A stretch of DNA of 64,000 nucleotides from IMGVR_UViG_3300026484_000087:142245-206244, one strand, 5' to 3'; shown: positions 15,945 through 47,183, counted from the stretch's first letter. Numbers and translations are program-made. Notes: generated by a model not told the origin, from the sequence alone.

Positions 15945-15976
15945 GATACTGCCACGTATCTACATATATTATATAT
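15945..15976 (-). promoter_or_regulatory. Class I promoter-like ATATATAAT plus GATAC-GTGGCA-GTATC leader hairpin
   Basis: One of four copies with identical 7-nt spacing. Confidence 0.7.
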
Positions 15977-16052
15977 GGTTGAAAATAAGTGGAAAGTTAG
16001 ATGTATAATTATTAAACGCAATATAAATAATTGAATAATTAAAGGATATGAT

Positions 16053-18503
16053 ATGTATATAGAAAATTTAACACTTAGCAGATATAAAAGATTATTTTTG
16101 GCATATATAAATAAATTGGAATATACCCCAGAAAAAAGAATAAATATAATTGTTGGTAAAAATGGATCTGGTAAGTCCTCCACTTTAAAAGAACTTACTC
16201 CGTTGCCAGCTAATTTAACTAAAGACTATGATGAAGATGGTTATAAAAAAATAACTATAAAACATAAGGGTAGTAAATATGTGTTGACTTCTGGCATAGT
16301 AGGTAAGAATAAACATAGTTTCATGGTAGATAATGAAGAGCTTAATCCAGCTGGTACAAGAAAAGTACAACTTATGTTAGTTAAAGAACACTTTAATTTA
16401 ACACAAGATATACACGATACTCTTATAGGACTAAAGAACTTTACATCTATGTCAACCGTAGAAAGAAAAAATTGGTTTACAAATATATCAACAGTAGACT
16501 ACACTTATGCTATAGGCGTATATAATAAGATAAAGCAAAGACATAGGGATATAGTGGGAGCATTAAAGATATCTCAAACAGAATTAACCAAAGGTAGCGA
16601 TAGTATTAAAACCGAAGAGGAAATAAATTCTATAAAGGGTGAAATAAAAATACTTAAAGAGATATTGGATCTGGCTATGTCTTCTAAAGAACAATTTAGA
16701 TCACCAGTAGATATTGATGAAACCAAACTTATGATGCTTGTTGATATGGGTTATAAAGTATTGTCAGAACTCAATAAACCAGATCTAGATGTAGATATAG
16801 ATGTTGCTATTGGATCTATTAGTAATGAAATTACTCTTTTAAAGAATGAGATAGAAAAACAAAATAAAATATTGAAAGATCTAATGTTTATGGAAGATAC
16901 TAAAGATAGTTCTGATGCCAAACTTATAGATGAAACAATACTTGAGTTGCAAAAAAAGATAAGTACACTAGAAGATTCATTTATAGTGAAAATACCAAGA
17001 GATGATCTTCCTGAATTTATAAACTCTTTTAATTATAGATATCAAGACATCATAGTTATATTAAATGAAATTTCTATTAGGAATGATGCTGATTATGATA
17101 TAGACCTATATAAAAAGAATTTAACAGATATTGATGTTATAAATGCAAATATAAATACATTTGTAAATCTTAGAGAGACTTTATTTAAAACGAAGGATTC
17201 TATGGAACATAATAGAGATCATAATGAAGTTGAATGTGTTAAGTGTGGTAATATTTGGTCTATAGGTTATGACGAAAAAGAGTATAAGATAGTTATTGAT
17301 AAGATAGATAAATTAAGTGTTAAAATAGAGAAACTTAAAAAAAGACTTGATGAACTTAATGAAGTAGTAAGTACTTTTAAAGAGAAAATAACCTATACTA
17401 AACAGTTGTTATCTATTAAAGACAATGAAACTAATTTATACAATAAACAGGTTTTAGAACATGTTCTTGATAAATACAATGTTCTTACCGAAAGCAAAGC
17501 TATTATAGACTATATGTATAAAGTTAAGAATAATGTAGCAGAGCTTGAAAAGATACCTATTTATGTAAAAGAATATGAAATGCATCTTAAAGATAAAGAG
17601 ATATTAGAAGTAAAACGTAAAATGGAGGTTGAATACTTCAATACTAATAAGGATAACATAGAAGAAGAGTTAAGTAACAACAAGGTCAGATTAAAAGAAC
17701 TTGATAATAAGTTAAACTCTGTTAAATCCTATAAATCCAATTTATCTATACTTACAAAGATATCTGATACTCTTATAGATAGTATTAAGAAATTGAACTC
17801 TAATAAACAAGTAGAGATATCTATGGCCAGAAATAATAGTCTTAACGAATCCATTAAAGTTATAAATCTTGAGATAAGTAAATTAGAATCTATAATATCA
17901 GATTCTTTATATAACTCTAAACTTATAGAGAATAACAAAGAGAAAGTTATAGAGTTGGATAAAAGAAAGAAAGCCACCGCTTTATTATTGGAAGTAATGT
18001 CTCCTAATAACGGTTTAATAGCTAAATCGATAACACAATTTCTTGATATGTTCATAAACGATATGAATTCTATAATAAATAAGGTATGGAATTATAGTAT
18101 AGATGTTCTTCCTTGTAAGATAGATGATGGAGTTGATTTAGATTATAAGTTTGAGGTTAGGGTAGATGGTAGAAACGTTATGGAGGATGTTAGTAAGACT
18201 AGTTCATCTATGAAGGAGATAATTAATTTAGCTTTTAAAATAGTGAGTATGAAATATCTTAATATGGAAGATTATCCATTATACTTAGATGAGTATGCTG
18301 CATCATTTGACGCACATCATGCTATAAAAGCATATGACGGTATAGAGACGTTAGCTTCATCCAGCTTTAATCAAATTTTCATGATATCGCATTATGAAAG
18401 TACATACACCAGGTTCAGTGATTGTGATATATCTGTATTAGATGCAGAGAATATATTGCTTAATGGAGATATGGAAATAAATAGAGTATTAAAACTTAGT
18501 TAG
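16053..18503 (+). CDS. sbcC: SbcC/Rad50-like SMC ATPase
   Basis: Walker A GKNGSGKS, coiled coils, zinc-hook CVKC, signature-like SSSM and Walker B LYLDE. Confidence 0.9.
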   Translation: MYIENLTLSRYKRLFLAYINKLEYTPEKRINIIVGKNGSGKSSTLKELTPLPANLTKDYDEDGYKKITIKHKGSKYVLTSGIVGKNKHSFMVDNEELNPAGTRKVQLMLVKEHFNLTQDIHDTLIGLKNFTSMSTVERKNWFTNISTVDYTYAIGVYNKIKQRHRDIVGALKISQTELTKGSDSIKTEEEINSIKGEIKILKEILDLAMSSKEQFRSPVDIDETKLMMLVDMGYKVLSELNKPDLDVDIDVAIGSISNEITLLKNEIEKQNKILKDLMFMEDTKDSSDAKLIDETILELQKKISTLEDSFIVKIPRDDLPEFINSFNYRYQDIIVILNEISIRNDADYDIDLYKKNLTDIDVINANINTFVNLRETLFKTKDSMEHNRDHNEVECVKCGNIWSIGYDEKEYKIVIDKIDKLSVKIEKLKKRLDELNEVVSTFKEKITYTKQLLSIKDNETNLYNKQVLEHVLDKYNVLTESKAIIDYMYKVKNNVAELEKIPIYVKEYEMHLKDKEILEVKRKMEVEYFNTNKDNIEEELSNNKVRLKELDNKLNSVKSYKSNLSILTKISDTLIDSIKKLNSNKQVEISMARNNSLNESIKVINLEISKLESIISDSLYNSKLIENNKEKVIELDKRKKATALLLEVMSPNNGLIAKSITQFLDMFINDMNSIINKVWNYSIDVLPCKIDDGVDLDYKFEVRVDGRNVMEDVSKTSSSMKEIINLAFKIVSMKYLNMEDYPLYLDEYAASFDAHHAIKAYDGIETLASSSFNQIFMISHYESTYTRFSDCDISVLDAENILLNGDMEINRVLKLS

Positions 18504-18526
18504 TATAACCATATGGTTATACTAAC
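18499..18526. terminator. 28-bp perfect palindrome
   Basis: GTTAGTATAACCATATGGTTATACTAAC between convergent genes. Confidence 0.75.
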
Positions 18527-19136
18527 AGTTACATTTTATTTTTTTTATATAAGATTCTAGGTTTCTTATATGGGTATCTTTTTTATCTAATAGCGTTAAT
18601 GTTTCTTGGTATCTAGTTCTAAAACTTTTCTTAACAGATGATTTGTTCTCTCTAAGTAATTCCATTTGCTTACTTGTAGTATCATCTAACAATACTTTAG
18701 CAGAGGTAGGGATCTCTTTTAAGGCAGCTTCTACTCCGAGATTGTCGTATATAACATTAATCAAATCATCTTTCAACGTTGTAAGATCTAAATCCAATGG
18801 TAATAAGCCTAATGAAATAGCCAGCATCCTTTCTTGATGTTGTTTACCAACTATAACAGGTATACTTAATATTTTATTAGCTGGTACATAAAGATATTCG
18901 TTACCAGTACTTAATAGAACTACTATAGGTACTTTATTTTCAAGATCTCTTGCTAGGTCTTCTTCAGTAAGACCTACTGGTTTATAGATATTGTCAAGAG
19001 GTTTATCTGTAGCAAGTTCATCTAGACTACGTATAGCTGTAACAAGGTATTCTTCTAAACTACTTAATACATTATCAAATGGGGCTGCTAACACAAACTT
19101 ACCTTTTGAATTTATTGGTGGTACTGTATATTCCAT
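18522..19136 (-). CDS. Conserved phiKZ-like hypothetical protein
   Basis: 204 aa, AAAGGA RBS and a class II motif upstream. The N-terminal PPINSKGKF.L..PF motif is recalled from jumbo phages. Confidence 0.65.
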   Translation of the reverse strand: MEYTVPPINSKGKFVLAAPFDNVLSSLEEYLVTAIRSLDELATDKPLDNIYKPVGLTEEDLARDLENKVPIVVLLSTGNEYLYVPANKILSIPVIVGKQHQERMLAISLGLLPLDLDLTTLKDDLINVIYDNLGVEAALKEIPTSAKVLLDDTTSKQMELLRENKSSVKKSFRTRYQETLTLLDKKDTHIRNLESYIKKIKCNC

Positions 19137-19153
19137 TATTATTCCTTTATTTA

Positions 19154-19179
19154 TTTAATCAATAAAATGTTATGGGTAA
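19154..19179 (-). promoter_or_regulatory. Class II promoter-like motif
   Basis: Minus strand reads TTACCCATAACA-TTTTAT-TGATTAAA. Confidence 0.6.
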
Positions 19180-19206
19180 TAATTGAAAAAAAAAATAAAC
19201 ATGATA

Positions 19207-19491
19207 TTAGATATCATGCTCATCCAGATCAACTGACAGTCTGATCTTATTTGGTGTCATAGACACAACTTTAATGTTGAATTTTGTGTAGATATTAACA
19301 AGATCATTGAAATTATCAATAATATCAGTATAACAAAATCCACCACATACTAGTTCATCGAACTCTCCAGAGCTTGAAGCTATTGGAAATGTTCTTTCCA
19401 ACAACTCTTTATGTACTGTATCAAATCTTACGATAACTACCATAGTTCTTGGATCTATATTTTCTAGTTGTTCTTCAGTTAGTTTTTTCAT
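19207..19491 (-). CDS. Hypothetical protein
   Basis: 94-aa ORF with an AGGAG RBS, coupled to the upstream gene. Confidence 0.65.
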   Translation of the reverse strand: MKKLTEEQLENIDPRTMVVIVRFDTVHKELLERTFPIASSSGEFDELVCGGFCYTDIIDNFNDLVNIYTKFNIKVVSMTPNKIRLSVDLDEHDI

Positions 19492-19873
19492 TGTCTTCTC
19501 CTATTTCCTTAATATAGTCTTTGAATCTATTTAGCTCATTAAGACTCATATTACATTCGAACTCTTCAGTCCATTCTAATGTACAAAGCTCAGCGATGCT
19601 TTTACCAGCATCTTTATAATCCTGAACAGTTCCAGGACTAACTTGATCTTTTAATACATCAACCACTATTTTGTTATTATCATTGTATTCAACAACAACT
19701 CTAACTGTTCCTACGTATATAAGATCTACTTCTCTTTTATTGTCTTGTCTTATTCTACTAGCGAAAGCCATACTATCTTTTGGATAGTTTCCTCTATTGT
19801 CAAAGTTTCTTGTTAGAGGACTAACCCCAGTAGTAGTAAAATTATTAGAAAAGTTTTGTGGATTAAATGACAT
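19475..19873 (-). CDS. Hypothetical protein
   Basis: 132-aa ORF with an AAGGAG RBS and a class I motif at 19991-19999. Confidence 0.7.
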   Translation of the reverse strand: MSFNPQNFSNNFTTTGVSPLTRNFDNRGNYPKDSMAFASRIRQDNKREVDLIYVGTVRVVVEYNDNNKIVVDVLKDQVSPGTVQDYKDAGKSIAELCTLEWTEEFECNMSLNELNRFKDYIKEIGEDNEKTN

Positions 19874-20078
19874 AATGTCTCCTTCCGTAATAGACCATTG
19901 ATTATAGGTTCTAACTTTTGTTAGATTATTTTAAATTACCCATAATAAAAGAATCATTAGCTATTTGATTCTTCCCCTATTACTACTTTTATTATATATG
20001 GTTGAAATATATTCGAAACTCAATTTTAACAGTTTTTATAGACTAAGTAATTTTATGATAAAATATAAGGAAATTAAT

Positions 20079-21518
20079 ATGTTAGATAATGAAAAACAAT
20101 ATGCTGCTTGTGTGTATACTGATGGTAGTGCTAATAATATGTTGAAGATATGGGGATGGGGTTCTCACGGTTATATATATGACATTAATGAAAAGCCTAA
20201 GGTTACTAAAAATAAGCCAGTTAATATGGTAGTTACTGACATAGGATATTTAGAACCAGGAGAGTTGAAGATCAAACCAAATGAATTAGTTAATCCAGTA
20301 GTTTATTTAGATTGGTATGGATCTTACCGTAGAGCTGGTACAAATAATGTTGGAGAATTATTAGCTATAATAGAAACAGTAAAAAAATTACTAGAACATA
20401 ATGTTACTAAGATAACTTTATTCTCAGATTCTACATATGCTATTGGTGTATTTAAATCTAGCAAAACTAAAACAAAAGAATCTATAATTAAAAACGTAGA
20501 AGCTAATCAGGACTTATGGTTACTTGCTAAAGATATAAATGATACTGTAGAAAAAAGTAATATAGAGTTAACTATAGAAAAGATAAAAGCACATAATGGA
20601 CATCTTGGTAATCATACGGCAGATGATATGGCTATGCTTGGTAGATACAATTCTACTAAAATAATGAATGATGAAGAGATTGATTTTACATTAAGGGAAC
20701 CACAAGGTTATTGGAAGCCTAAAAATGAAAGACATCCTTTCTTAACAGCTAAACAAATATTCTTTACCAATAACGATAAGAATCCAAATGAGTATTCTTT
20801 ATTAGGTTATAAGGAAGAAAACGAGATAGGTAAAAAAATGCATATAGCCAACTTTGGTTTAGTTGTTTTAAAAGATAAAGATGAGACTATAGACCTTATT
20901 AAGAATACATATAATGAGTTACTGGGAGAACACTCAGTAGTGTCTACTGTTAGAATGGATCTTTTATTTAAACCAGATAACTTTAAATATGTAGAAAGAT
21001 ATGGTAAGAAATGTTTAATGCCTTTAAATAAAAATAGAAGGGGTATAAGTATACTAGAAAAAGAAATAGTGGCTAACTCTATAAATCCTCCAGCGTTAGC
21101 TTATACAGCCTTAAATAACCTAGACAACCTAAGAGTTGTATTAAATGATTTTAACGCTCTGAAGGCAGATAAAGGCTATATAACAGGCAAAGAATTTATT
21201 GACATTACAGATATGTATTATACTACTAATGATAAAGGTAAAAATGTATTTAGACAGGAATTAGGTAATGATATTAAAAGTTTAAAATATGTCTATGAAG
21301 TAGATGATAAAAAAGCAGATCTTATAATTCAATTTGGTAAAGACATACTTGCTAGAAATCCTATGAAGAAACTAGAAAAATTAGAACCTAAAGTATATTT
21401 AGTTATAGTAAATAGTAACAATGTAAAGTTGGACTATTATACCATAGTTGATATAGAAAGTACAGGCGATCAATCTGTATGGAGTAATTTTTATGCAAAG
21501 ACAGTTTTTATAAAGTAA
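20079..21518 (+). CDS. rnhA: RNase HI-like nuclease with C-terminal extension (phiKZ gp155-like)
   Basis: YTDGS, TNNVGELLA, SDSTY and KIKAHNGHLGNHTADDMA motifs. ATG 20079 follows AAGGA. Confidence 0.85.
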   Translation: MLDNEKQYAACVYTDGSANNMLKIWGWGSHGYIYDINEKPKVTKNKPVNMVVTDIGYLEPGELKIKPNELVNPVVYLDWYGSYRRAGTNNVGELLAIIETVKKLLEHNVTKITLFSDSTYAIGVFKSSKTKTKESIIKNVEANQDLWLLAKDINDTVEKSNIELTIEKIKAHNGHLGNHTADDMAMLGRYNSTKIMNDEEIDFTLREPQGYWKPKNERHPFLTAKQIFFTNNDKNPNEYSLLGYKEENEIGKKMHIANFGLVVLKDKDETIDLIKNTYNELLGEHSVVSTVRMDLLFKPDNFKYVERYGKKCLMPLNKNRRGISILEKEIVANSINPPALAYTALNNLDNLRVVLNDFNALKADKGYITGKEFIDITDMYYTTNDKGKNVFRQELGNDIKSLKYVYEVDDKKADLIIQFGKDILARNPMKKLEKLEPKVYLVIVNSNNVKLDYYTIVDIESTGDQSVWSNFYAKTVFIK

Positions 21519-21547
21519 GAGTAGTATAGCATATGCTATACTACTCT
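21518..21547. terminator. 30-bp perfect palindrome
   Basis: AGAGTAGTATAGCATATGCTATACTACTCT between convergent genes. Confidence 0.75.
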
Positions 21548-21808
21548 ATACCTCATATTTAACATATGAATGTTATCTGCTATATTTTTAAAAAGATTAA
21601 ATTCTCTTGGATCTTTTTTACGATTAACTAAATTTTTTCTATAACCTTCATAATTCAGTTTTATTAAATGTTTGGCATAAGAATCAATATCTTTAAAATC
21701 TATAATGTTATAGTTTAAGTTATATAATTCAACAATGTCTAATAATAAATTATCTAGATCATCCTTAGTGAATGTTATTTCACCAAATTCAATTTTATCT
21801 GTTGTCAT
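21536..21808 (-). CDS. Hypothetical protein
   Basis: 90 aa, AAAGGAG RBS and a class II motif upstream. Confidence 0.7.
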   Translation of the reverse strand: MTTDKIEFGEITFTKDDLDNLLLDIVELYNLNYNIIDFKDIDSYAKHLIKLNYEGYRKNLVNRKKDPREFNLFKNIADNIHMLNMRYRVV

Positions 21809-21818
21809 ATTTTCTCTC

Positions 21819-21845
21819 CTTTAATCAGATAAATGTTATGGGTAA
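21819..21845 (-). promoter_or_regulatory. Class II promoter-like motif
   Basis: 27-bp exact copy of 14504-14530. Confidence 0.65.
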
Positions 21846-21878
21846 AAAAATAAATAGAGTAGAAACTACTCTATCTTA

Positions 21879-23018: not shown

Positions 23019-23200
23019 TATCTTTCCTCCACTTTAACTATAATGTTACTGCATTCGGTATTTGACCATATTGTAACTGAACCATTCTTTACTTCCCAAC
23101 AATGACCTGTTCTTGTTTTACTTAAAGGCATTATTTCATATGCCCAACCATTACAAACCTCTACCATTTTCTCACATCCGTCTACTGTTATAACTTGCAT
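23018..23200 (-). CDS. Hypothetical protein
   Basis: 60 aa, AAGGA RBS. Confidence 0.6.
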   Translation of the reverse strand: MQVITVDGCEKMVEVCNGWAYEIMPLSKTRTGHCWEVKNGSVTIWSNTECSNIIVKVEER

Positions 23201-23233
23201 TTTAGTTCCTTATTTATTTTTTAATAATTACCA

Positions 23234-23323
23234 TTAATTGATATAGGAAATTATTTCTTTTAGAATATCTTTTAATAAAGATATCAACACAGTTCTTAAA
23301 AGAGATATTAAAAACTTTCTCAT
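23234..23323 (-). CDS. Unannotated 29-aa amphipathic/hydrophobic peptide
   Basis: MRKFLISLLRTVLISLLKDILKEIISYIN with an AGGA RBS 6 nt upstream. It is below the ORF-track cutoff. Confidence 0.5.
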   Translation of the reverse strand: MRKFLISLLRTVLISLLKDILKEIISYIN

Positions 23324-23343
23324 GTGGATTCCTAGTCAAATTT

Positions 23344-23374
23344 TACAGTATGGTACCGTCAGTACCATACTGTA
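23344..23374. other. 13-bp-stem hairpin within a structured leader
   Basis: TACAGTATGGTAC-CGTCA-GTACCATACTGTA. Confidence 0.75.
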
Positions 23375-23565
23375 GTCATTTGTTTATTTCTAGTTAATCC
23401 ATCGAACTAAATCGATCCACCATATTAAATGGTCCATTCACTAACGATACGTATACCGTAAATGATGGTTCACAGTAATTACAACTGCAAACTCTAATTA
23501 TATTATATATGGTTGAAAAAAAATGGAAACTCAACTTAGAGCATTTAATGCTCTAAGTTGTTAAA

Positions 23566-24231: not shown

Positions 24232-24249
24232 AGTATTTCCTTTTATATT

Positions 24250-25271: not shown

Positions 25272-25303
25272 GATACTGCCATGTATCTATATTAATAATA
25301 TAT
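25272..25303 (-). promoter_or_regulatory. Class I promoter-like ATATATTAT plus GATAC-ATGGCA-GTATC hairpin
   Basis: Copy 2 of 4. Confidence 0.7.
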
Positions 25304-25320
25304 AAGTAAAAAAAATTAGA

Positions 25321-25352
25321 TAACTACTTAGGACATATGTCCTAAGTAGTTA
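25321..25352. terminator. 32-bp perfect palindrome
   Basis: TAACTACTTAGGACATATGTCCTAAGTAGTTA at the stop of the HNH-fusion gene. Confidence 0.75.
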
Positions 25353-26831
25353 CATCTTAACGATTTTTATAAGGTTATTAACCATGCCTATTTGATGGTT
25401 TATTAAACTATAATTAGTCATTGCTATAGATATCAAACTAGCATTATTATCTAGACCAGTAGATAATGCATGTAATGTAGATTTAGTTATTTCAAACTTA
25501 TTATCTTTACTAACAATATGTTCATGTAGCATATTAGTTTTTTCAGCTATCTCTTTAACTAAGCTATCTATTTTACTAAAATTAACCTTACCAAGTTTAT
25601 TTCCTAGAATGGCAGTATCTTCAGCAAGCTTAGGCAATGAAGTTAAATTTGGTACAAGTTTACCAACTGGCATTCTATCGTTGTTAGAGTTAACATCTAT
25701 AACCCCAGATAGATTATTTTTTATCTCATAAGCAACTTCTTCGGTTTTTTCAAAAAGTGTTTTCTTAGGTTTAAAAGATTTTCTGTAATCTTCATCAGAC
25801 ATTATCTTACTTAAGATGACATTTAACTCACTAAGAGAATCTATAATTAAAGAACCTAACATATGTTCATTTTTACTAAGTTTATTTTCAAGTTCTATTA
25901 GGTTAGTGTTTAAACCAATAACGACTGGGGTTTCTCTAGATTCTATACTAGCATAACTTTTATTCTTAATAATTCTCTTAAGAGAACTAATATCACTTCT
26001 AAGTTGTCTAAGTTCTTTATTGCTTTCACCAGATATACCACTTATGGTTTCTGTAACACCAGAGAATAATTCGCTAATAGAATTTAATCTATTTAAAACA
26101 AAGTTATTTATATTACTAATTAAACCATTTTCATTACTAAGCATATTAACCGCTTCATCTACTGATTCAAAACTAAGAGTTTCTTCTAACGTTACTAACT
26201 GATTAACTTTTTCCATATTCTTTTTCCTTTTATCCCATACATCTTGTATGTTCTGTGATTGACTACCCCATTTAAGATTGGTAGCATTACAATTCTCTTT
26301 ATTATCGTCCTTATGCATAACGACAAAACCTTTTGGACCAACTCCATGAAATGCAGTACAAACCAATATATGTACATACTCCATTTTACTTTTGGTGCTA
26401 CCATCTTTAAAAATAGATACTTTAAGATAGTGTCCAGCACTAACACCTTTAGTAAAATTACCTGTTTTCAATGTAAGTATTTCTCCAAGGTTACTCGCCA
26501 GATACTTACTAAATCCAGGTATAGGTTTCCATATTCTATCCATAGCATTTAATGGGACAGGTATCCTATTTGATACATCTACATTAACTGGCAACTCAAT
26601 TGGTATTATGTTTTTATGTATATAAGGAGCTTCCTCATCTACATATAGGCCATCATCTGATAGACTAAATACTTTATAGTACCATCCATCAAGTTTTCTA
26701 TGTTTTTTCTTAATAGCTTTAACAAGGTCTTTTAATGTCTTATACATTTTTATATAACCAGTGCTATTTACCTTAATTTCTATTTTTTTATTAAGTATAT
26801 CTGTTTTATAAATTGGTAAATATAATACCAC
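25350..26831 (-). CDS. NUMOD4-HNH endonuclease fused in frame to a putative head protein
   Basis: GTG start after AAGGAG. NUMOD4 WKPIPGFSKYLASNLG and HNH VHILVCTAF...HKDDNKENCNATNLKW. An internal AAAGGA RBS plus ATG at 26216 opens a 288-aa helical domain with S-x-E motifs. Confidence 0.75.
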   Translation of the reverse strand: MVLYLPIYKTDILNKKIEIKVNSTGYIKMYKTLKDLVKAIKKKHRKLDGWYYKVFSLSDDGLYVDEEAPYIHKNIIPIELPVNVDVSNRIPVPLNAMDRIWKPIPGFSKYLASNLGEILTLKTGNFTKGVSAGHYLKVSIFKDGSTKSKMEYVHILVCTAFHGVGPKGFVVMHKDDNKENCNATNLKWGSQSQNIQDVWDKRKKNMEKVNQLVTLEETLSFESVDEAVNMLSNENGLISNINNFVLNRLNSISELFSGVTETISGISGESNKELRQLRSDISSLKRIIKNKSYASIESRETPVVIGLNTNLIELENKLSKNEHMLGSLIIDSLSELNVILSKIMSDEDYRKSFKPKKTLFEKTEEVAYEIKNNLSGVIDVNSNNDRMPVGKLVPNLTSLPKLAEDTAILGNKLGKVNFSKIDSLVKEIAEKTNMLHEHIVSKDNKFEITKSTLHALSTGLDNNASLISIAMTNYSLINHQIGMVNNLIKIVKM

Positions 26832-33088: not shown

Positions 33089-33120
33089 GATACTGCCTAG
33101 TATCTATTTTAATAATATAT
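33089..33120 (-). promoter_or_regulatory. Class I promoter-like ATATATTAT plus GATAC-TAGGCA-GTATC hairpin
   Basis: Copy 3 of 4. Confidence 0.7.
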
Positions 33121-42600: not shown

Positions 42601-42935
42601 GGATACTCTGCTACTAAATCATTATAGTATGTATCAAATTTCTTTAATTCATTTCTAGTAGTCTTATATTTATCAAGGAGTTCTTTAGTTAGTTTTTGAA
42701 CAGAACCATCTTCAATGATAGTTATATTTATTCGATGGTCTAATTTATGATATTCTCCAGATATGTTCATAAAGTATTTCCAGGTAGTACGATCCTCTGG
42801 TTCATCTCCTAGAATACTTGTGCCGTATATTTTAACAAGTTCATTGTTAATTTGTATTGCTGTATCTATACTGAGAATGATTAAACTTTTAATCAATCTT
42901 ACAGTATCTTCAATATATTTTGTAGTTGTAATCAT
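36678..42935 (-). CDS. Large virion structural protein (phiKZ-like baseplate/tail N-domain) with long C-terminal repeat array
   Basis: The N-terminal ~600 aa carry WKYF.N.SGEYH..D, EEQE..LI and LYKNLRY motifs. The remainder has about 24 degenerate ~50-55-aa repeats ending in (M/L/W/Y)(F/Y)(S/K)P. Confidence 0.7.
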   Translation of the reverse strand: MITTTKYIEDTVRLIKSLIILSIDTAIQINNELVKIYGTSILGDEPEDRTTWKYFMNISGEYHKLDHRINITIIEDGSVQKLTKELLDKYKTTRNELKKFDTYYNDLVAEYPEDELLIKGIIYGLDINDVINCTNGELVAHSPYLVEEQETNLIHRLNEFSKNYFLRWHIRDYGIIDDLYIPSLLATLYTKMVLKTLNIRQDYIFTSEAHSFHIYEFFRSNYGIDVDVKVLSKETRFWLYKNLRYIKNNIGKNKTLDILIEKILTENGIGVAEVELLNGLPDEDLLNLTDITKPIYDKKENRFISKRRNDYYLIDDNDDTSGKALLLRQFSKAFVDNDMVIKDTNFYDNTLEYKLDKNKFNKQKTKTFKIKVNRSYVVENKIELKMVLDNFIQMAFRDIYKTSITFIDNNTGFTYDLDAKQAAFLILKLLAVISGNVNPKIPSYTANKLLNSVITVDALNYNMINPTITYDIAKKLIELRPDRLTYLDRDIFNQYLKDLNSFNSVIWNIATNSNDMLINNSIKTMYKRLHMKETIIFNQGDSTIDELMANQFVDFYFTDVYDYKETLNKVLYAFTGFYFDKDDVNEMVDKYIKIVKNLSSSTIQFMNSTNSLDVMSTRYNTNMSISTPGIIDIHEGTFRALEDFYGYMAARDAPYGCFLKSDIELMIPRGYTRINPPKLMLYEPEERLALTNVLHVKNEMPDVVFSNKSYLTMFRPYIGTKINDMKDIIQLASSETSKVGRVVKRYIQTAMEWYSKELDYSNTPTITTTAGPLSFRLFSPIVNSKSDNIIQTIGSNSFNLSYGNFINDVTKFKLYDISSNVEVNGKPEMVMSTNRRLLDWYKPTVKSMSDKTMNKSDSLTIDRGQTGYIKQDSINITMETPLGIFNYSMPNITYSIGGIPDMFRPSLDSGKNDEDYYKTIDNVFNASMIPYGKQKAKVKLLMSDGIHSITGETSINLIRNIESSLNMYSPKIGSFIDKNNKESTEYFKDTYIKGIAKDHTLKTRIENYDSEMYQETSTLIANVPLKGIDFFKPTFTTDTLNITLDLKFISNKFNSNVNIKRGETKLIVSGETGLNTDNAMPTLVMNTSKRLLKWFSPIVSGNINDIVDVIDKTENEFIHGSSRTDDNIITMHVDKTDIIVEQTTMISRSKKASITMYSPILLSNGGFDRTFIDGINTVNKLSGTVLNTPVKMDMQLHHDLENSTLPVLSFVSEFGTVNMYSPNISMDKKEREVLNSEIEYRVSMYGNLGKGVTDVKLYEDFSTIPNVLGHVNKDVLNWFSPIVSGITNDEVSSINYSASKTVVMGKTNNHRNMVSMSVISKELWSSEISTFKVSTNNSIINMFNPIVALNTSVEDTTLAFVSNFTKGFGRVQINTTKLRMYTDDILENNKPTAIIDTGMRVLDYFKPNVSNIYNPLAEDLVPMKNNYGYNGSLNNDHNVLTMFNETMDIESSNKPNVYGSVRKADTKLYKPRSEVFSINESYRIVAGSFDTSKGRYINNHMEVLLEDIDNRPNDGSKPVLRGSRNYKTIDMFSPKVDGITYGIDEVVRNPYSENYVPMGSVTGKNEMMFYNTSNVIDGDIEPNVYFNTTKNIIEMYHPKFRVNSNEQVDGLDTTINTSTVSGTSRSDANKITMDINSKDIWVDVAPIGKFNTNLSTLTLFKPDFKTGSVDEKDILDSIPKGINYKGNVLQDINKIIMYGENGEISEYEVGSLIGNNDVALNLFKPLVTDVISNRADDIDGIITETIVGSKRVKTTNGILLNMSPVIAGDLNPVLYGSVNSDLDDMFSPTSTAKGYKLNETYTLTTDTFTGTYNRKFVKALLYSKDLNTNNDAELIGDMSSNVDMFKPKINKSVEIVFKDTEYVVDNTIKGSKTKKDVTGIGRVEENNLAKTIVPELVGSIDNELDNMFVPVMPKTETLELEDTEVINVNDLTGLAISSELNTIIYSNEDGVDSTPALIATDGKVDVGMFKPKLSRTKDIETNKTSNINTDVVIGEINVSTTRTIMYDMDRDKSSKPNVIGDNRTPVDMYSPKLKGSLDKTKDTISINNEIDINGLVNINELKTIVYEDETVDKPNVVTKDTTEIK

Positions 42936-42986
42936 TGTTTTTCCTCAATATGTAAACTGAAATAAAATAAGTAAAAGGACTTTATT

Positions 42987-45638
42987 ATGTCAAAGAAAAC
43001 AGAAGCTAAGATTCCATCTGTCATTAACGAAAATAAAAATCTGGCAGCAGTAGTTAGTAAGCTAAATACTGACGATAGAACTAGTGCTCCTAAGCAATTA
43101 AAGACTGCTAATCTACCAGACATATCTGAATCTATAAAAGATAAAATAACAAACAATGAAACCATAGTTAGATTATTTCCAGATATAGAGCTTAGCATAC
43201 AGATAATGGTGTCGTCTATCTTATCACCTAATGATATGTCTAGTACCAGCATCATCTATGGAATAGATGGTTTAGAGTTACCAACAGACGTTAAGGTAGG
43301 GTTATTAGAGAACATTAAATCTTATGTATCAAATAACTACAAGCTGGAAGATAAATTGTCAACTATTATAAGAGAAGCCTTATTTACTAAAGGGGCATAC
43401 ATAGAAACAATTATACCCGAATCATCTGTTGATGCTATGATAAATGGTAATGGTGAAGTAACAAGTTTAGAAACATTTGTTAATGATAATTTAAGGACTT
43501 CTAAACTAAAGATACTTGGTGATAATGAAAAAAGCGTAACTACATTTTCTTTAGAAGATATGGATTTAAGCTTATCTAAAGATAAAACTGTAAAATCACC
43601 GATATCCGTAGAAATATCGGATGAAGATTTAGGTATTGATATAACTGATAATTATTCTATATTGGCAGCAACTAGTCAAATGTCTAAAATAGTAAGTAAC
43701 AAGATAAGTACTGAAATGTATAAAGAAGATACGGTTACTGATGATGATGATGACTTCTTTAATAACTTATTTAAGCCAACTACAGTTAATAATAAAAGTG
43801 GTTCAGTTACAGTTCTTACTGAAGATGAAACTAATAGAGAAAGCATTGGTATGCCTTTAACTATGAAATTACCAGTAGAATCAACCATACCCGTTTATGT
43901 TAGTGGTGATGTTACTAATCATTTGGGTTACTTTGTATTGTTAGATGATAAAGGGGTTCCTATTACTAATAGTTCTGACTTTACTGTATCTAACGATGAC
44001 TTTAAAAATAACTCTAATATAAAAGCCAAGTCTATTATAGATAAAGCATCTACTGCGATCAATGGTTATTCTAAAGCCGTTCCTAAAGTTGAGAATATAG
44101 AGGAGATCTATAGTTATGTAGTTAATCAAAAACTAAAGAATAAACTTAAAAACGGCTTACTAGGTGATTTAGCAGATTTTAGTAAAGACAATAGTGAAAT
44201 ATATAGAACTATGCTTAGTAGAGTTTTATCTAAACAAAAAACCAAAATACTATTTGTTCCAAAAGAACTGGTTGCATTTTATGCTTTTAAATTTAGAGAT
44301 AATGGTACTGGTGAATCTTTATTAGAAACCATATCAGTATTGTCTAGTATTAGAGCTATTCTCTTATTCTCTAGAATAATGGCAAATATTAAGAATTCAA
44401 TAACTACAACTGAAGTATCTGCTACATTAGATGAAAATGATTTGGATCCATCTAAAACCATGGATAAAATAGTATCTGAAGTTATGCGTAGTAGAAGCAC
44501 ACAAATGCCTATTGGTGTTACTAGAGTAGAAGATCTTGTTGACTGGACCAAGAAAGTAGGTTATAAATTTAATTTTAAACATGATAGTTTACCAGATATG
44601 GAAATAAACACTAGTGAAGAAAATACGAGTAAGGTAATTCCTGATTCAGATCTAGATGAAGAAATAAGAAAACAAATACTTATGTCTTTTTCTTTGCCAC
44701 CAAAAGCAGTTGAAGATGGTTACGACAGTGATTTTGCAACTACTATTGTACAGAACAATGTTTTATTTACCAAACGTGTTATGGTGCATCAAGACATACT
44801 AGCACCTTTAGTTGCTAACCATATTAAGATTATTCTTAAAAATGATATGGTTATTTTTAATGAAATTAAAGATACTATTAGTAAAAACATAACTGCTATT
44901 ATTAGAGAACTTAAAAAAGAAAAAAATGATCTTGTGTCTAGTAAAGATATAGATAAAGACAAACTTACTATATGGCTTACAAATGCATATATAGATAAAA
45001 TAACAATAAGTTTTCCTAGAATAGAAGAACATGAAACTGATAATATGAAAGAATCTTTTGATAATTATAAAGATAGCCTTGATGATTATATAGAAACATT
45101 CTTTAGTACAGATGCTTTACCAGACGAGTTAGCTGGTCAATTAGTAGATAAAATGGATGACTTTAAGTTGGCTATACAAAATAGTTTACTTAGAAAATGG
45201 ATGAGTGATAATAATTACTTACCAGAACTACTAAATGCTACTACTGTTGATAAAGATGGGAAACCTATTTATGATGTTCTTGGCGAATACGAGACTTATC
45301 TTAAAACTCTTAGTGAGATTATTGTTCCATTTATGAAACAAAATAATAGTGACGTAGAAAAAATAGATGCTAAAGTTGATAAAGCAGAAGGAAACGATGA
45401 AGAAGAGGAAGAAGATATGGATAACGATGAAACATCTACTGATGATACAGGAAACACTGATGTAGATAATGATGACAACACTGAAGGCGGTGATGATACA
45501 GAAGAAGCAGATGATGCTGAAACCAATGATGGTGATCCAACAGATGATCTTGAGCCAAATAGTGGAGACACTGATGGTGATGATGATAACAATGAAACAG
45601 ATGATGGTACTGAACCACCTGAACCAAGTTTTGATTAA
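42987..45638 (+). CDS. Putative portal protein (phiKZ gp129-like)
   Basis: 883 aa. LFPDIEL..QIMVSSILSPNDM, LGYFVLLD..G.P and GTGESLL motifs as recalled for this family, with an acidic C-terminal tail. Confidence 0.65.
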   Translation: MSKKTEAKIPSVINENKNLAAVVSKLNTDDRTSAPKQLKTANLPDISESIKDKITNNETIVRLFPDIELSIQIMVSSILSPNDMSSTSIIYGIDGLELPTDVKVGLLENIKSYVSNNYKLEDKLSTIIREALFTKGAYIETIIPESSVDAMINGNGEVTSLETFVNDNLRTSKLKILGDNEKSVTTFSLEDMDLSLSKDKTVKSPISVEISDEDLGIDITDNYSILAATSQMSKIVSNKISTEMYKEDTVTDDDDDFFNNLFKPTTVNNKSGSVTVLTEDETNRESIGMPLTMKLPVESTIPVYVSGDVTNHLGYFVLLDDKGVPITNSSDFTVSNDDFKNNSNIKAKSIIDKASTAINGYSKAVPKVENIEEIYSYVVNQKLKNKLKNGLLGDLADFSKDNSEIYRTMLSRVLSKQKTKILFVPKELVAFYAFKFRDNGTGESLLETISVLSSIRAILLFSRIMANIKNSITTTEVSATLDENDLDPSKTMDKIVSEVMRSRSTQMPIGVTRVEDLVDWTKKVGYKFNFKHDSLPDMEINTSEENTSKVIPDSDLDEEIRKQILMSFSLPPKAVEDGYDSDFATTIVQNNVLFTKRVMVHQDILAPLVANHIKIILKNDMVIFNEIKDTISKNITAIIRELKKEKNDLVSSKDIDKDKLTIWLTNAYIDKITISFPRIEEHETDNMKESFDNYKDSLDDYIETFFSTDALPDELAGQLVDKMDDFKLAIQNSLLRKWMSDNNYLPELLNATTVDKDGKPIYDVLGEYETYLKTLSEIIVPFMKQNNSDVEKIDAKVDKAEGNDEEEEEDMDNDETSTDDTGNTDVDNDDNTEGGDDTEEADDAETNDGDPTDDLEPNSGDTDGDDDNNETDDGTEPPEPSFD

Positions 45639-45654
45639 AAGAAAAAAGTACAGT

Positions 45655-45687
45655 ATATACTATATAGCATAACGCTATATAGTATAT
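45655..45687. terminator. Bidirectional terminator-like hairpin
   Basis: ATATACTATATAGC-ATAAC-GCTATATAGTATAT between convergent genes. Confidence 0.7.
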
Positions 45688-45691
45688 GTAT

Positions 45692-47128
45692 TTAAATTTG
45701 CTCTATAGTATAGCTGTTAGTTAATTTAGATTTAATTAATCTAAATATATCACCTTCATCAGTAGTTAGGATGATAACATTATTAACAAGATCTTGTGAA
45801 GTTAGTACTGTTTGTATTAAACTATTTAGTATAGGAGTAAGTTCATCTTTAATGTATTTAACCGTTCCTTTACTAACGTCCGTTAACTCATATTTAACAT
45901 CCATATTACATGTGTTAATAAGAGTAAGTTTTTCACCATACAATAACTTACCAACCTTATTACTGTTAACAGTATCTTCTATCTCTAAAGAACTTAATGT
46001 ACTTGCATTCTCTTTAAGAACAGTATAAAGATCAGTTAATAAAGCTTTGTGTAGACTTGCTTCTCTAACATCAGTGAAATTCTCAATCGTATGCAATAAA
46101 CTCATATAGTCATCTGCAAAGCTATCTATTTTAGTAGGAGCCCCTATCATTGATCTAAAATAGTTATTAACCAATTTAGTAATAGAATTATCTATTGATT
46201 TAAAGGCTTTAGATAAAAGTGAGTTCTTACTATATTTATATTTAGCAATGAAATCAGCAACTTCTTTAAGGTTATCGCTTTCCATTACTGTTTTATAATA
46301 GAACATCTCAGTTGGATCATTAGTAACTCTATTAACTATAAAAGTATCTACAATCATAACCTCCATAGCAGTGTTCTCAAACATACCATCTTTATTATCA
46401 TGAACAATGAAGTCCATTCTATTAAACATCTCTTTAACGCTATCAACGATCTCTATTTTATCTAACACTAGGTTTAGTTTATGATCTATTTTACCGTTAA
46501 CTATTTTACCACTTATTACATTAGCCGTATCATATACGCTAGCATGTTCTGAATATTTCATAGTCTTCTTGATCTCCTCATCTGTCTTCTTTTCTATCTT
46601 GTTTTTAAACGTACCATCTTCACTAACAATAACCCTAACACATTTTAAATCAGGTGTAGTAAGAAATAAGAATTCATTACCGTCCAAAGGAGTGGTTGCA
46701 ACTAACTCTTTCTTCTTTTGTGGTTGTGGTTGTTGAGGTGCCTGCTGTGGTTGTTGTTTACTAATCATTTCATCAACATAATCTAATGCACCAAAGTTTT
46801 TACCACTATGTTTTACATCAGTACCTTGAGATAACCCATTTCTAACATTACTATTAAATATACTGCCACCAGTGTTTTGATACATTGGATCTTGTTGTTG
46901 GTTATACATTGGTCTCTGTTGCTGTGGTTGTTGTTGAACTGGATTTATATACATACCTGTATTTTGCTGTTGCGGAGGATATATATTCTGTTGCTGATTC
47001 ATCATTTGTTGTATGTGTGGTAATAATGAATTGTAATCACTAGCTTCCTGTTGGTTGAATGGTATGCCAGCTACCCTCATAGCCTCCAGTTTATTAAAAT
47101 ACTCTACTTGACTTTGATTTAATGCCAT
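45692..47128 (-). CDS. Hypothetical protein with Q/P/N-rich low-complexity N-terminus
   Basis: 478 aa with QQMMNQQQNIYPPQQQ... in the first ~135 aa. AAAGGA RBS. Confidence 0.75.
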   Translation of the reverse strand: MALNQSQVEYFNKLEAMRVAGIPFNQQEASDYNSLLPHIQQMMNQQQNIYPPQQQNTGMYINPVQQQPQQQRPMYNQQQDPMYQNTGGSIFNSNVRNGLSQGTDVKHSGKNFGALDYVDEMISKQQPQQAPQQPQPQKKKELVATTPLDGNEFLFLTTPDLKCVRVIVSEDGTFKNKIEKKTDEEIKKTMKYSEHASVYDTANVISGKIVNGKIDHKLNLVLDKIEIVDSVKEMFNRMDFIVHDNKDGMFENTAMEVMIVDTFIVNRVTNDPTEMFYYKTVMESDNLKEVADFIAKYKYSKNSLLSKAFKSIDNSITKLVNNYFRSMIGAPTKIDSFADDYMSLLHTIENFTDVREASLHKALLTDLYTVLKENASTLSSLEIEDTVNSNKVGKLLYGEKLTLINTCNMDVKYELTDVSKGTVKYIKDELTPILNSLIQTVLTSQDLVNNVIILTTDEGDIFRLIKSKLTNSYTIEQI

Positions 47129-47152
47129 TTGTTTTCCTTTATATTTGTATTT

Positions 47153-47183
47153 GATACTGCCTGTATCTAAGTTAATAATATAT
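47153..47183 (-). promoter_or_regulatory. Class I promoter-like ATATATTAT plus GATAC-AGGCA-GTATC hairpin
   Basis: Copy 4 of 4. Confidence 0.7.

What the first reader, a model, noticed from the sequence alone, without database searches (positions are those of the whole stretch)
15945..47183. Conserved leader hairpin GATAC-(N1-2)GGCA-GTATC at a fixed distance from an AT-rich promoter motif
Seen: four intergenic copies on the minus strand (15945-15976, 25272-25303, 33089-33120, 47153-47183), each ATATATWAT-N5-TA-GATAC-loop-GTATC. The spacing is exactly 7 nt and the loop always ends in GGCA, so loop sequence, not only pairing, is conserved. Downstream genes are the gp68-like factor, the KH/ATPase operon, the large accessory operon and the Q-rich protein. 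Inference: a 5'-terminal RNA hairpin bound by a regulator or protecting mRNA, or a DNA hairpin read by the virion RNAP as in N4-type promoters. It would define a sub-regulon.
Basis: partly seen in the sequence, partly recalled or inferred. Interest (0 to 1): 0.72.

Follow-up and report, generated by a model that had tools for sequence, protein, structure and literature searches.

The report
Early promoter with built-in 5' hairpin
The four sites are copies of the early promoter of an uncultured giant (phiKZ/AR9-like) phage. Each is joined to a small hairpin that should form at the very first bases of the early mRNAs, most likely to protect their 5' ends. The promoter is a known kind; the stereotyped hairpin is a new twist on it.

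Summary
The window is the last 64 kb of a 206-kb, 30% GC phage contig from a hydrothermal-vent metagenome. The phage encodes chimallin and split RNAP beta-like subunits.

The AT-rich box occurs about 29 times in the genome, always on the minus strand. It has the same core as the mapped AR9 virion-RNAP early promoter (AAATATATATTAT-N6-G+1). By that analogy transcription starts at the A/G of the invariant TAG. GATAC is then the first transcribed bases, and the inverted repeat forms a hairpin starting at nt +1/+2.

Seventeen genome copies carry the GATAC-loop-GTATC hairpin. Most other early promoters carry a different hairpin at the same place. Four or five related metagenomic phages share the design, with loop N1-3 + GG(C/T)A.

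- Nine of the ten stem changes are G.U wobbles on the sense strand.
- Loop length varies from 4 to 7 nt.
- Orthologous leaders keep a 5' hairpin with unrelated sequence.

These points favour an RNA structure over a DNA operator or an N4-type promoter hairpin. AR9 and phiKZ early leaders lack the feature.

The most likely function is a 5'-terminal stabiliser; this is inferred. The conserved GGYA loop is unexplained. "gp68-like" is really gp69-like, and no KH domain was found.

The parts
15965..15976 (-). Site 1: AT-rich early-promoter box ATATATAATATA, centred at about -10
   Evidence: same core as the AR9 early promoter
15990..15995 (-). Site 1: upstream TTTCCA element at about -34, followed by a T-rich spacer. 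It is conserved in the promoter logo.
15945..15960 (-). Site 1: hairpin GATAC-GTGGCA-GTATC. The predicted +1 is G15960 (or A15961).
15903..15932 (-). Second conserved leader element in site 1's leader: hairpin GTATC-CTAGAT-GATAC plus CTCTAACAA. The same element sits in two other leaders of unrelated genes.
   Evidence: compensatory T-A to C-G in the third copy
14594..15889 (-). Gene downstream of site 1, 431 aa from ATG 15889. It matches phrog_3141, which is PHIKZ069 (gp69-like, not gp68-like).
25292..25303 (-). Site 2: promoter box ATATATTATTAA
25272..25287 (-). Site 2: hairpin GATAC-ATGGCA-GTATC. Predicted +1 is G25287; the leader is 40 nt to ATG 25247.
25320..25353 (-). Terminator-like 15-bp hairpin plus T-run directly upstream of the site 2 promoter (terminator-promoter-hairpin cassette)
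33109..33120 (-). Site 3: promoter box ATATATTATTAA
33089..33104 (-). Site 3: hairpin GATAC-TAGGCA-GTATC. Predicted +1 is G33104; the leader is 48 nt to ATG 33056.
47172..47183 (-). Site 4: promoter box ATATATTATTAA
47153..47167 (-). Site 4: hairpin GATAC-AGGCA-GTATC. Predicted +1 is G47167; the leader is 39 nt to ATG 47128.
47205..47230 (-). Inverted repeat followed by ATTTTT directly upstream of the site 4 promoter (terminator-like)
   Evidence: sequence read directly
50258..50290 (-). Early-type promoter without the family hairpin. Predicted +1 is near 50274, and a long 5'-proximal hairpin starts at about +4. The orthologous G001 leader has an unrelated 20-bp hairpin.
50502..50536 (-). Weaker early-type box followed by the hairpin ACATATA-GCTGA-TATATGT at the family hairpin's position. 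The G001 orthologue has a different hairpin there.
23467..23510 (-). Early-type promoter (box ATATATAATATA, upstream GAGTTTCCA) with its own hairpin from +1. Predicted +1 is 23494.
19983..19999 (-). Early-type promoter with no hairpin in the first 32 nt. A longer stem starts at about +4.
9494..9529 (-). Early-type promoter inside the 3' end of the upstream ORF. A weak hairpin starts at +5. The orthologues in G001 and G005 have different hairpins starting at +2/+3.

Best explanation
The four sites are copies of the early-class promoter of an uncultured, chimallin-encoding phiKZ/AR9-like jumbo phage, fused to a short leader hairpin.

The promoter. The box (TTTC.A at about -34, a T-rich spacer, then ATATAT(T/A)AT(T/A)(A/T)A-NN-TA) is the -10-centred AT-rich element. 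In this phage group that element is read by the injected multisubunit virion RNAP.

The hairpin. Transcription is predicted to start at the A or G of the invariant TAG. GATAC is then the first transcribed sequence, and the downstream GTATC folds back on it. The mRNA therefore begins with a 5-6 bp stem-loop that leaves 0-1 unpaired 5' nucleotides. An unstructured A-rich spacer, the Shine-Dalgarno sequence and the start codon follow. The left arm is fixed by the promoter's preferred initial transcribed sequence; the right arm is fixed by pairing.

The function. The hairpin most likely acts in cis as a 5'-terminal stabiliser. It would hide the triphosphate end of early mRNAs from 5'-end-dependent decay (RppH-type pyrophosphohydrolase plus RNase E or RNase J).

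The conserved GG(C/U)A on the 3' side of the loop suggests an additional sequence-specific contact whose partner is unknown.

What is shown: the motif, its copy number, the strand bias, the coupling of promoter and hairpin, conservation in relatives, and sense-strand-only pairing. What is inferred: the identity of the polymerase, the exact +1, and the stabilising function.
For: Promoter identity:
- The core ATATATTAT plus 6-7 nt to a conserved purine matches the experimentally mapped AR9 vRNAP early promoter AAATATATATTAT-(6N)-G+1. It also fits the general rule for RNAP-encoding jumbo phages.
- There are 29 sites, all on one strand.
- Downstream genes include two RNAP beta-like subunits (phrog_2987, phrog_3015), chimallin (phrog_4795) and a gp69-like gene.
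- AR9, phiKZ and other phages with the same box also start with GAT(A)(C) but lack the right arm. The left arm is therefore promoter-constrained.

RNA hairpin:
- 40 of 55 promoter sites in six related genomes fold from nt +1/+2 with dG of -2.8 kcal/mol or better. Random TAG-anchored windows do so in 15% of cases (p = 2e-21).
- 11 of 24 sites outside the GATAC family also do so (p = 4e-4).
- Orthologous leaders keep a 5' hairpin with unrelated sequences.
- Among 23 distinct family hairpins, 99% of cells are paired. Nine one-sided changes are all G.U on the sense strand and only one change breaks a pair.
- Loop length varies from 4 to 7 nt while GGYA stays next to the right arm.
- The fold is -2.8 to -3.9 kcal/mol as RNA but only -1.0 to -2.5 as DNA.
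- The hairpin stands alone and leaves the SD free; UTRs are 36-48 nt.
- It never occurs without the promoter.

Stabiliser model: it requires the stem to start within a few nucleotides of the 5' end, whatever the sequence. That is the pattern seen. This rests on established knowledge of 5'-terminal stem-loops such as the E. coli ompA leader and B. subtilis 5' stabilisers; it was not tested here.
Against: - No transcription start has been mapped for this phage. The +1 rests on analogy, and the spacing to G is 7 nt against 6 nt in AR9.
- The only RNA data set found holds contigs of a 90-97% identical relative and gives no 5'-end resolution.
- Within the family the stem shows no double compensatory change. 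Support for the structure comes from wobble changes and from the non-family hairpins.
- The rows of that alignment were collected with a pattern that allowed only transitions in the arms. The PWM-only lists show no transversion variants.
- A pure stabiliser does not explain why GGYA is conserved across genomes, or why G001-G004 use GGTA where G000 mostly uses GGCA.
- The stem is weak (5 bp, AT-rich). It would melt if the host is thermophilic, and the host is unknown.
- AR9 and phiKZ manage without such hairpins: 2 of 18 and 3 of 24 leaders.
Confidence: 0.5

Rival explanations
1. The hairpin is a factor-binding RNA tag. It would be read through its GGYA loop by a phage or host protein. That protein could modify the elongating virion RNAP (as with lambda boxB/N or HIV TAR/Tat). 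Alternatively it could control translation, localisation or timed decay of early mRNAs.
For: - The loop's 3' side, GG(C/T)A, is conserved across five or six diverged genomes, while the first 1-3 loop bases vary freely.
- The size (5-bp stem, 4-7 nt loop) is like boxB.
- Orthologous genes keep the family hairpin while the rest of the leader diverges, for example site 4 versus G001.
- The copies changed together, from GGCA in G000 to GGTA in G001-G004. That would fit co-evolution with a reader.
Against: - About 40% of early promoters use unrelated hairpins at the same place. The shared property is therefore position and pairing, not sequence.
- No candidate RNA-binding protein was identified. 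No KH or other RNA-binding domain was found in the genes tested.
- Some family members lack GGYA: AACT, GACA, CGCA, ACTA.
Confidence: 0.2
2. The element acts at the DNA level as part of the promoter. It could be a downstream promoter or initially-transcribed element. It could also be a hairpin extruded from the melted non-template strand that helps a sigma-less virion RNAP open or escape. The N4-type hairpin-promoter idea belongs here.
For: - The left arm GATAC is promoter-linked, since it is shared by AR9-like phages without the right arm.
- The hairpin is strictly coupled to the promoter at a fixed distance.
Against: - The right arm starts anywhere from +10 to +13, and GGYA moves with it. 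A DNA element read by the polymerase should keep register.
- The DNA hairpin is marginal, at -1.0 to -2.5 kcal/mol.
- The wobble changes would be A.C mismatches on the template strand.
- N4 hairpins lie upstream of +1 and have 3-nt loops (from my own knowledge of N4 promoters; the held review PMC4496689 was listed but not read).
- No T7/N4-like RNAP domain was found, though that search had no positive control.
- Non-family promoters have unrelated sequences at +1..+20.
Confidence: 0.12
3. The box is an ordinary host sigma70/sigmaA promoter: TTTCCA, 16 nt, then TATAAT/TATTAT, with start about 7 nt downstream. Host RNAP would then make these transcripts. The hairpin reading would be unchanged.
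For: Two window sites score 10 of 12 in the sigma-70 scan, and the implied start coincides with the TAG. The upstream TTTC.A element sits where a -35 would.
Against: - The scan finds 151 such sites against 141 expected, so the match carries little information.
- Conservation extends over about 17 contiguous positions, including the start. That is far beyond two hexamers, and it equals the AR9 vRNAP consensus.
- The phage belongs to the group that encodes its own virion and non-virion RNAPs and transcribes independently of the host.
Confidence: 0.08
4. The inverted repeat is a palindromic operator for a dimeric DNA-binding repressor that shuts off early transcription.
For: An inverted repeat overlapping +1 is the classical place for a repressor. 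It is present on many early promoters.
Against: - Half-site spacing varies from 4 to 7 bp.
- The centre is asymmetric and conserved on one side only.
- Nearly all deviations keep sense-strand pairing as G.U rather than preserving half-site sequence.
- Non-family promoters have unrelated stems.
Confidence: 0.05

Closest known systems
[quoted passage not shown]
   Same: - A highly conserved AT-rich element of about 10 nt centred near -10.
- A T-rich or conserved upstream region.
- A conserved purine start a fixed 6-7 nt downstream.
- Tens of copies in front of early operons, including non-virion RNAP genes.
- Transcripts starting GAT....
   Different: In AR9 and phiKZ the leaders are mostly unstructured at the 5' end: 2 of 18 and 3 of 24 have a +1 hairpin, against a 15% background. 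Here 73% do, and 17 copies share one stereotyped hairpin with a conserved loop. No paper read or searched here mentions such a hairpin.
5'-terminal stabilising stem-loops of bacterial and phage mRNAs (E. coli ompA leader hairpin; B. subtilis 5' stabilisers)
   Same: A short stem-loop with 0-1 unpaired 5' nucleotides, followed by a single-stranded leader and RBS. Position and pairing are conserved rather than sequence. The comparison with these systems rests on my own knowledge.
   Different: Here the hairpin is hard-wired to one promoter class of a phage-encoded polymerase and repeated 17 times. Its loop motif (GGYA) is conserved. The effect on stability is untested.
Lambda nut boxB / HIV-1 TAR (leader RNA hairpins that recruit a regulator of the transcribing polymerase)
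   Same: A small hairpin in the early leader with a sequence-specific loop, made by the first polymerase molecules. TAR also starts at +1.
   Different: The loop is not a GNRA-like pentaloop. No boxA-like partner or N-like or Tat-like protein was identified. Many early promoters use unrelated hairpins.
N4 virion-RNAP hairpin promoters
   Same: A virion-delivered polymerase and an inverted repeat in the early promoter region.
   Different: The N4 hairpin lies at -17 to -7, has a 3-nt loop, forms in DNA on the template strand and is read by a single-subunit enzyme. Here the hairpin is at +1..+16 with a 4-7 nt loop. It pairs on the sense strand only, and the phage has multisubunit RNAP genes.
T4-type PeSL cassettes (promoter-early plus stem-loop modules)
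   Same: Repeated, stereotyped early-promoter modules with an associated stem-loop. Some modules here follow a terminator hairpin directly, and some leaders are duplicated word for word.
   Different: In PeSLs the stem-loop precedes the promoter. Here the focal hairpin follows it and is transcribed.

Membership tests
Jumbo-phage virion-RNAP early promoter (phiKZ/AR9 type) | Highly conserved AT-rich element of about 10 nt centred near -10 | tested here: met
   The 10-mer ATATATTATT occurs 24 times, and the PWM finds 29 sites with about 17 conserved positions. The core is identical to AR9's ATATATTAT.
Jumbo-phage virion-RNAP early promoter (phiKZ/AR9 type) | Conserved purine start site 6 nt downstream of the element | tested here: inconclusive
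   An invariant TAG follows. The A is 6 nt and the G is 7 nt after ATATATTAT. No start-site data exist for this phage.
Jumbo-phage virion-RNAP early promoter (phiKZ/AR9 type) | Many copies in front of early operons, including non-virion RNAP subunit genes | tested here: met
   Sites precede phrog_2987 and phrog_3015 RNAP beta-like genes, chimallin, and gp69-like and other phiKZ-core genes. All sites are on one strand.
Jumbo-phage virion-RNAP early promoter (phiKZ/AR9 type) | Phage encodes multisubunit RNAP sets of the phiKZ type | tested here: met
   RNAP beta-like PHROGs, phrog_2943, and virion proteins phrog_3004 and phrog_3222 shared with phiKZ-like phages. I did not split the genes into virion and non-virion sets.
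Jumbo-phage virion-RNAP early promoter (phiKZ/AR9 type) | Transcribed early by the injected polymerase without new protein synthesis | not testable with these tools
   The phage is uncultured and from a metagenome.
N4-type hairpin promoter | Hairpin upstream of the start (about -17 to -7) | tested here: not met
   The hairpin lies 7 nt downstream of the -10-type box, at predicted +1..+16.
N4-type hairpin promoter | 5-7 bp stem with a 3-nt loop, formed in template-strand DNA | tested here: not met
   The loop is 4-7 nt. Wobble pairs exist only on the non-template (sense) strand. DNA fold energy is only -1.0 to -2.5 kcal/mol.
N4-type hairpin promoter | Giant single-subunit T7-like virion RNAP | tested here: inconclusive
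   No PF00940 match in the contig, but the control genomes were silent too and the contig is estimated 77% complete. The two giant ORFs match a lysozyme-bearing virion protein and phrog_3222.
5'-terminal mRNA stabiliser stem-loop | Stem begins within about 0-4 nt of the 5' end | tested here: met
   Met relative to the inferred +1. 40 of 55 sites fold from nt 1-2, against a 15% background.
5'-terminal mRNA stabiliser stem-loop | Structure and position matter, not sequence | tested here: met
   Non-family and orthologous leaders carry unrelated hairpins at the same place. The conserved GGYA loop of the family goes beyond this requirement.
5'-terminal mRNA stabiliser stem-loop | Lengthens mRNA half-life by blocking 5'-end-dependent RNases | not testable with these tools
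   Needs half-life measurements with stem mutants.
Lambda-type nut site (boxA + boxB) | 5-bp stem with a GNRA-like pentaloop, plus a boxA element and an N-type protein | tested here: not met
   The loop is N1-3 + GGYA. Only A-rich sequence follows. No N-like protein was searched for specifically.
Any curated RNA family (Rfam 15) | Match at the gathering score | tested here: not met
   0 matches over the whole contig.

The most novel reading that the evidence does not exclude
The GGYA-loop hairpin is a cis tag that marks mRNAs made by the injected virion RNAP of a nucleus-forming phage. An as yet unidentified phage factor would read it. That factor could keep the sigma-less polymerase elongating. 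It could route or translate the first transcripts before the phage nucleus exists. It could also destroy them on schedule at the early-to-late switch. This would be a boxB/TAR-like system in chimalliviruses. The second conserved leader hairpin, in front of the gp69-like gene and two other genes, would be a further layer of the same RNA-level control.
Probability: 0.15. Interest if true: 0.7.

Novelty: new variant of a known kind. Interest (0 to 1): 0.45.

Why it matters
Early gene expression of phiKZ-like (nucleus-forming) jumbo phages is run entirely by an injected, sigma-less multisubunit RNA polymerase. How its transcripts are recognised, protected and later switched off is poorly understood.

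This uncultured clade shows an early promoter with a transcribed hairpin built onto its start site. The hairpin is conserved across several diverged genomes and absent from the two best-studied models, AR9 and phiKZ. It gives three things:
- a ready-made motif for annotating early genes in metagenomic chimalliviruses;
- a compact promoter-plus-leader module whose effect on mRNA stability is easy to test;
- a candidate RNA handle (the GGYA loop) for finding a regulator.

If the hairpin only stabilises RNA, it is a neat but unsurprising adaptation.

Tried and rejected
- Megablast of 8 kb against the phage collection found nothing. tblastn of the gp69-like protein also found nothing.
- A scan of viral contigs for TAGATAC-N1-2-GGCAGTATC gave 64 hits. 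All lack the AT box and are at the chance level.
- Bacillus phage AgentSmith, the best named relative at 34% aa identity, lacks the box.
- The metagenome scan with a final Y in the pattern returned mostly chance AT-rich hits. Only L227, L248 and L276 were new family members.
- G006, a 184-kb phage, was a chance hit with no enrichment of the box.
- The sigma-70 scan was uninformative in this AT-rich DNA.
- Rfam found nothing.
- Pfam and PHROGs gave no RNA-binding candidate and no KH domain.
- phrog_3141 was not found in AR9.
- I looked for a late-promoter motif upstream of plus-strand genes. Only the A-rich context of the ribosome-binding site is shared.
- RNA evidence: one metatranscriptome (X3) holds contigs of a 90-97% identical relative over the RNAP beta-like and chimallin genes. 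No RNA coverage lies upstream of the predicted chimallin start. Coverage is patchy, the contigs have no direction and break in the diverged intergenic regions, so no start site can be read.
- Folding 60-nt instead of 32-nt leaders raises the background so much that the simple count loses power. The energy difference remains (median -8.9 versus -4.2 kcal/mol, p = 3e-5).
- I did not use structure prediction or complex prediction. No protein partner was in hand.

Full report
**1. What is there**

All four sites read as described on the minus strand:
- Site 1: box ATATATAATATA, then TG-TA, then GATAC-GTGGCA-GTATC.
- Sites 2-4: box ATATATTATTAA, then NN-TA, then GATAC-(ATGGCA / TAGGCA / AGGCA)-GTATC.

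The strict hairpin pattern matches 4 times in the window and never in 100 shuffles.

The window is the last 64 kb of a single 206,244-bp contig with 29.8% GC. The contig comes from a hydrothermal-vent metagenome and its own record is Ga0256837_1000004.

In the whole contig the strict pattern occurs 9 times, and close variants bring the family to 17 hairpins. The 10-mer ATATATTATT occurs 24 times, all on the minus strand. A PWM of the box plus TAG finds 29 sites, again all on the minus strand.

The loop-plus-right-arm word GGYAGTATY also occurs 13 times elsewhere. It never has a left arm there. The hairpin therefore exists only as an appendage of the promoter.

**2. What phage this is**

- The 883-aa and 2085-aa proteins match virion proteins of phiKZ-like phages (phrog_3004, phrog_3222). 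tblastn hits fall on about 280 phiKZ-like genomes. The best named relative is Bacillus phage AgentSmith at 34% identity.
- Genes behind the motif include two RNAP beta-like subunits (phrog_2987, phrog_3015) and the nuclear-shell protein chimallin (phrog_4795). They also include several phiKZ-core families of unknown function.
- The gene behind site 1 matches phrog_3141. In phiKZ that family is PHIKZ069, not PHIKZ068. From my own knowledge, gp69 is the protein reported as a nuclear import factor (PicA/Imp1); I did not check this here.
- No KH domain was detectable in the operon behind site 2. One gene there has a weak P-loop ATPase match.

**3. The box is the early promoter**

For AR9, dRNA-seq and primer extension defined 41 early promoters with the consensus AAATATATATTAT-(6N)-G+1. 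They are transcribed without new protein synthesis, so by the injected virion RNAP (PMC5312081).

Reviews and later transcriptome papers state the general rule. Every RNAP-encoding jumbo phage has a highly conserved AT-rich element of about 10 nt centred near -10 in front of early operons. Further conservation lies near -20 and -30 (PMC7598289, PMC8244752, PMC11512511).

The motif here has the same core, ATATATTAT. It also has an upstream TTTC.A at about -34, a T-rich spacer, and an invariant TAG 5-7 nt after the core. The A of TAG is 6 nt and the G is 7 nt after the core. The start is thus predicted at one of these two purines, so GATAC is nt +1/+2 to +5/+6 of the RNA. This is analogy, not measurement.

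A host sigma-70-type reading (TTTCCA-16-TATAAT) is formally possible for some sites. The scan finds as many such sites as in shuffled sequence, 151 against 141.

**4. The left arm belongs to the promoter**

AR9 early transcripts start GATA/GAAT. phiKZ ones start GAT/GAA/GTA. Other metagenomic jumbo phages with exactly the same box also read TAGATAC, but nothing complementary follows (L136, L137).

So G+1-A-T-A-C is the preferred initial transcribed sequence of this promoter class. This explains why the stem sequence is conserved without covariation. One arm is fixed by the polymerase and the other by pairing.

**5. The hairpin is a clade-wide, position-specific RNA structure**

Relatives were found through a protein search and through the box pattern:
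- G001: a 110-kb fragment, 66% aa identity in the 883-aa protein.
- G002, G003, G004 and G005.
- Three short metagenome contigs, L227, L248 and L276.

All use the same promoter. Their family hairpins read GATAC-N1-3-GGTA-GTATC.

I folded the first 32 nt after the predicted start for all PWM-defined sites of the six genomes. Forty of 55 have a hairpin whose first paired base is nt 1 or 2, with dG of -2.8 kcal/mol or better. Random TAG-anchored windows from the same genomes reach this in 15% of cases (binomial p = 2e-21). Among sites that are not of the GATAC family the count is 11 of 24 (p = 4e-4). Some of those are orthologous pairs and therefore not independent.

Orthologous leaders keep a 5' hairpin while its sequence is replaced:
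- G000 leader near window 50274 versus the G001 orthologue, which has a perfect 20-bp stem of unrelated sequence.
- G000 108330 versus G001 15243.
- Window 9513 versus G001 58038 versus G005 5110.

Among the 23 distinct family hairpins, 99.1% of cells pair. Nine one-sided changes all give G.U on the sense strand (A2>G, C16>U, C5>U, A14>G). One change breaks a pair. No change is doubly compensatory. The collecting pattern allowed only transitions in the arms; the PWM-only lists show no transversion variants.

Three further points:
- Loop length varies from 4 to 7 nt, with GGYA always adjacent to the right arm.
- The isolated hairpin folds at -2.8 to -3.9 kcal/mol as RNA and -1.0 to -2.5 as DNA.
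- In complete leaders the hairpin stands alone. An unstructured A-rich stretch and a free Shine-Dalgarno follow, and UTRs are 36-48 nt.

Comparators, by the same criterion:

| Phage | Early leaders with a +1 hairpin |
|---|---|
| This clade | 40 of 55 |
| G007 (218-kb phage with the same box) | 9 of 27 |
| phiKZ | 3 of 24 |
| AR9 | 2 of 18 |
| Random TAG-anchored windows | 15% |

The feature is characteristic of this clade and not of the whole phage group.

**6. Mechanism**

The data argue for a structure on the sense strand, hence in the RNA, that must start at the very 5' end. Its sequence is free except where the promoter fixes it. That is the known requirement for 5'-terminal stabilising stem-loops. 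These block pyrophosphate removal and 5'-end-dependent attack by RNase E or RNase J (established knowledge, not tested here). I take this as the most likely function, with about 0.5 confidence for the whole chain.

GGYA is conserved on the 3' side of the loop across diverged genomes, and most copies differ together (C in G000, T in the relatives). A pure stabiliser does not explain either fact. This keeps a factor-binding reading alive (boxB- or TAR-like, or a tag for timed decay or translation).

DNA-level readings are disfavoured for three reasons:
- The register of the right arm varies.
- The half-site spacing varies.
- Pairing holds on the sense strand only.

The N4 comparison fails on position, loop size, strand and polymerase type. 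The polymerase test had no positive control.

**7. Sub-regulon?**

The family hairpin marks 17 of about 29 early promoters. These include two RNAP beta-like genes, the gp69-like gene, the Q-rich protein gene and several unknown genes. Chimallin and others have idiosyncratic hairpins.

Orthologues retain their type across 35-82% protein identity. The distinction is therefore stable, but no functional theme is evident.

**8. RNA data**

No RNA run holds the phage itself. One biofilm metatranscriptome has contigs of a 90-97% identical relative over the RNAP beta-like and chimallin genes. There is none upstream of the predicted chimallin start. Coverage is patchy and gives no 5'-end resolution.

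**9. Verdict**

The promoter is a new member of a known kind. The obligatory, stereotyped +1 hairpin is a new variant that I did not find described. Its function is inferred. Interest is moderate.

Noticed in passing
window 15903-15932 (-); also G000 113,2xx and 52,2xx (L173:11240-11360, L169:18200-18320); G001 near 62,5xx; G002 near 25,2xx: A second conserved leader element, GTTAAG-[GTATC-CTAGAT-GATAC]-CTCTAACAA, sits between the 5' hairpin and the RBS of three genes that are not paralogues: the gp69-like gene, a 306-aa gene and a 322-aa gene. The third copy has a compensatory T-A to C-G change in the stem, and relatives carry the element too. It looks like a shared RNA operator of unknown function.
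   Followed up: partly
The listed 529-aa ORF from GTG 16183 overruns the promoter; the likely start is ATG 15889.
   Followed up: yes
G000 62738-64651 (L170:11738-13651, -), outside the window: There is a chimallin (nuclear shell protein, phrog_4795, E = 3e-40) homologue. This low-GC vent phage is therefore probably nucleus-forming. Its early promoter has its own +1 hairpin.
   Followed up: partly
window 25320-25353, 23532-23560, 47205-47230 (-), 18499-18526 (both strands): Long perfect terminator-like hairpins lie directly upstream of early promoters, forming terminator-promoter-hairpin cassettes. One at 18499-18526 is bidirectional, between convergent genes. Terminator-like sites number 13 against 5.1 expected in 20 kb.
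   Followed up: partly
window 23200-23494 (-): The early promoter at 23494 is followed in G000 by a leader of about 290 nt, rich in strong hairpins, before a 60-aa ORF. The G001 orthologue has a 55-nt leader. This may be an inserted structured RNA or an ncRNA.
   Followed up: no
G000 62239 and 12958 (L170, L167), outside the window: Two family leaders are identical from the box to the start codon (GGTAC variant) in front of different genes. Promoter-leader modules seem to spread by duplication or conversion.
   Followed up: no
window 25350-26831 (-): A 493-aa HNH endonuclease gene (phrog_59 and others) sits between two early operons, just upstream of site 2. It is probably a mobile homing-type element.
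   Followed up: no
window 142-7620 (+): A giant ORF of 2492 aa or more carries a phage-lysozyme domain near its C-terminus (PF00959, residues 2170-2297). It is probably a virion-associated lysin or tail protein.
   Followed up: no
window 50653-52821 (-): The major head protein (phrog_3231) lies on the same strand as all the early promoters, so strand does not equal temporal class. No late-promoter motif could be found upstream of plus-strand genes.
   Followed up: partly
G007 (IMGVR_UViG_3300009430_000004, loci L324-L350): A complete 218-kb phage with the same box and TAGATAC start shows several leaders in which the +1 GAT... pairs with a segment 15-25 nt downstream (9 of 27 sites). A looser form of 5'-end pairing may exist outside the clade.
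   Followed up: partly
L170:8000-13900 (G000 59,000-64,900): A 2025 biofilm metatranscriptome (run X3) contains contigs 90-97% identical to the RNAP beta-like and chimallin genes. A close relative of this phage is therefore present, and probably active, in another sampled habitat.
   Followed up: partly
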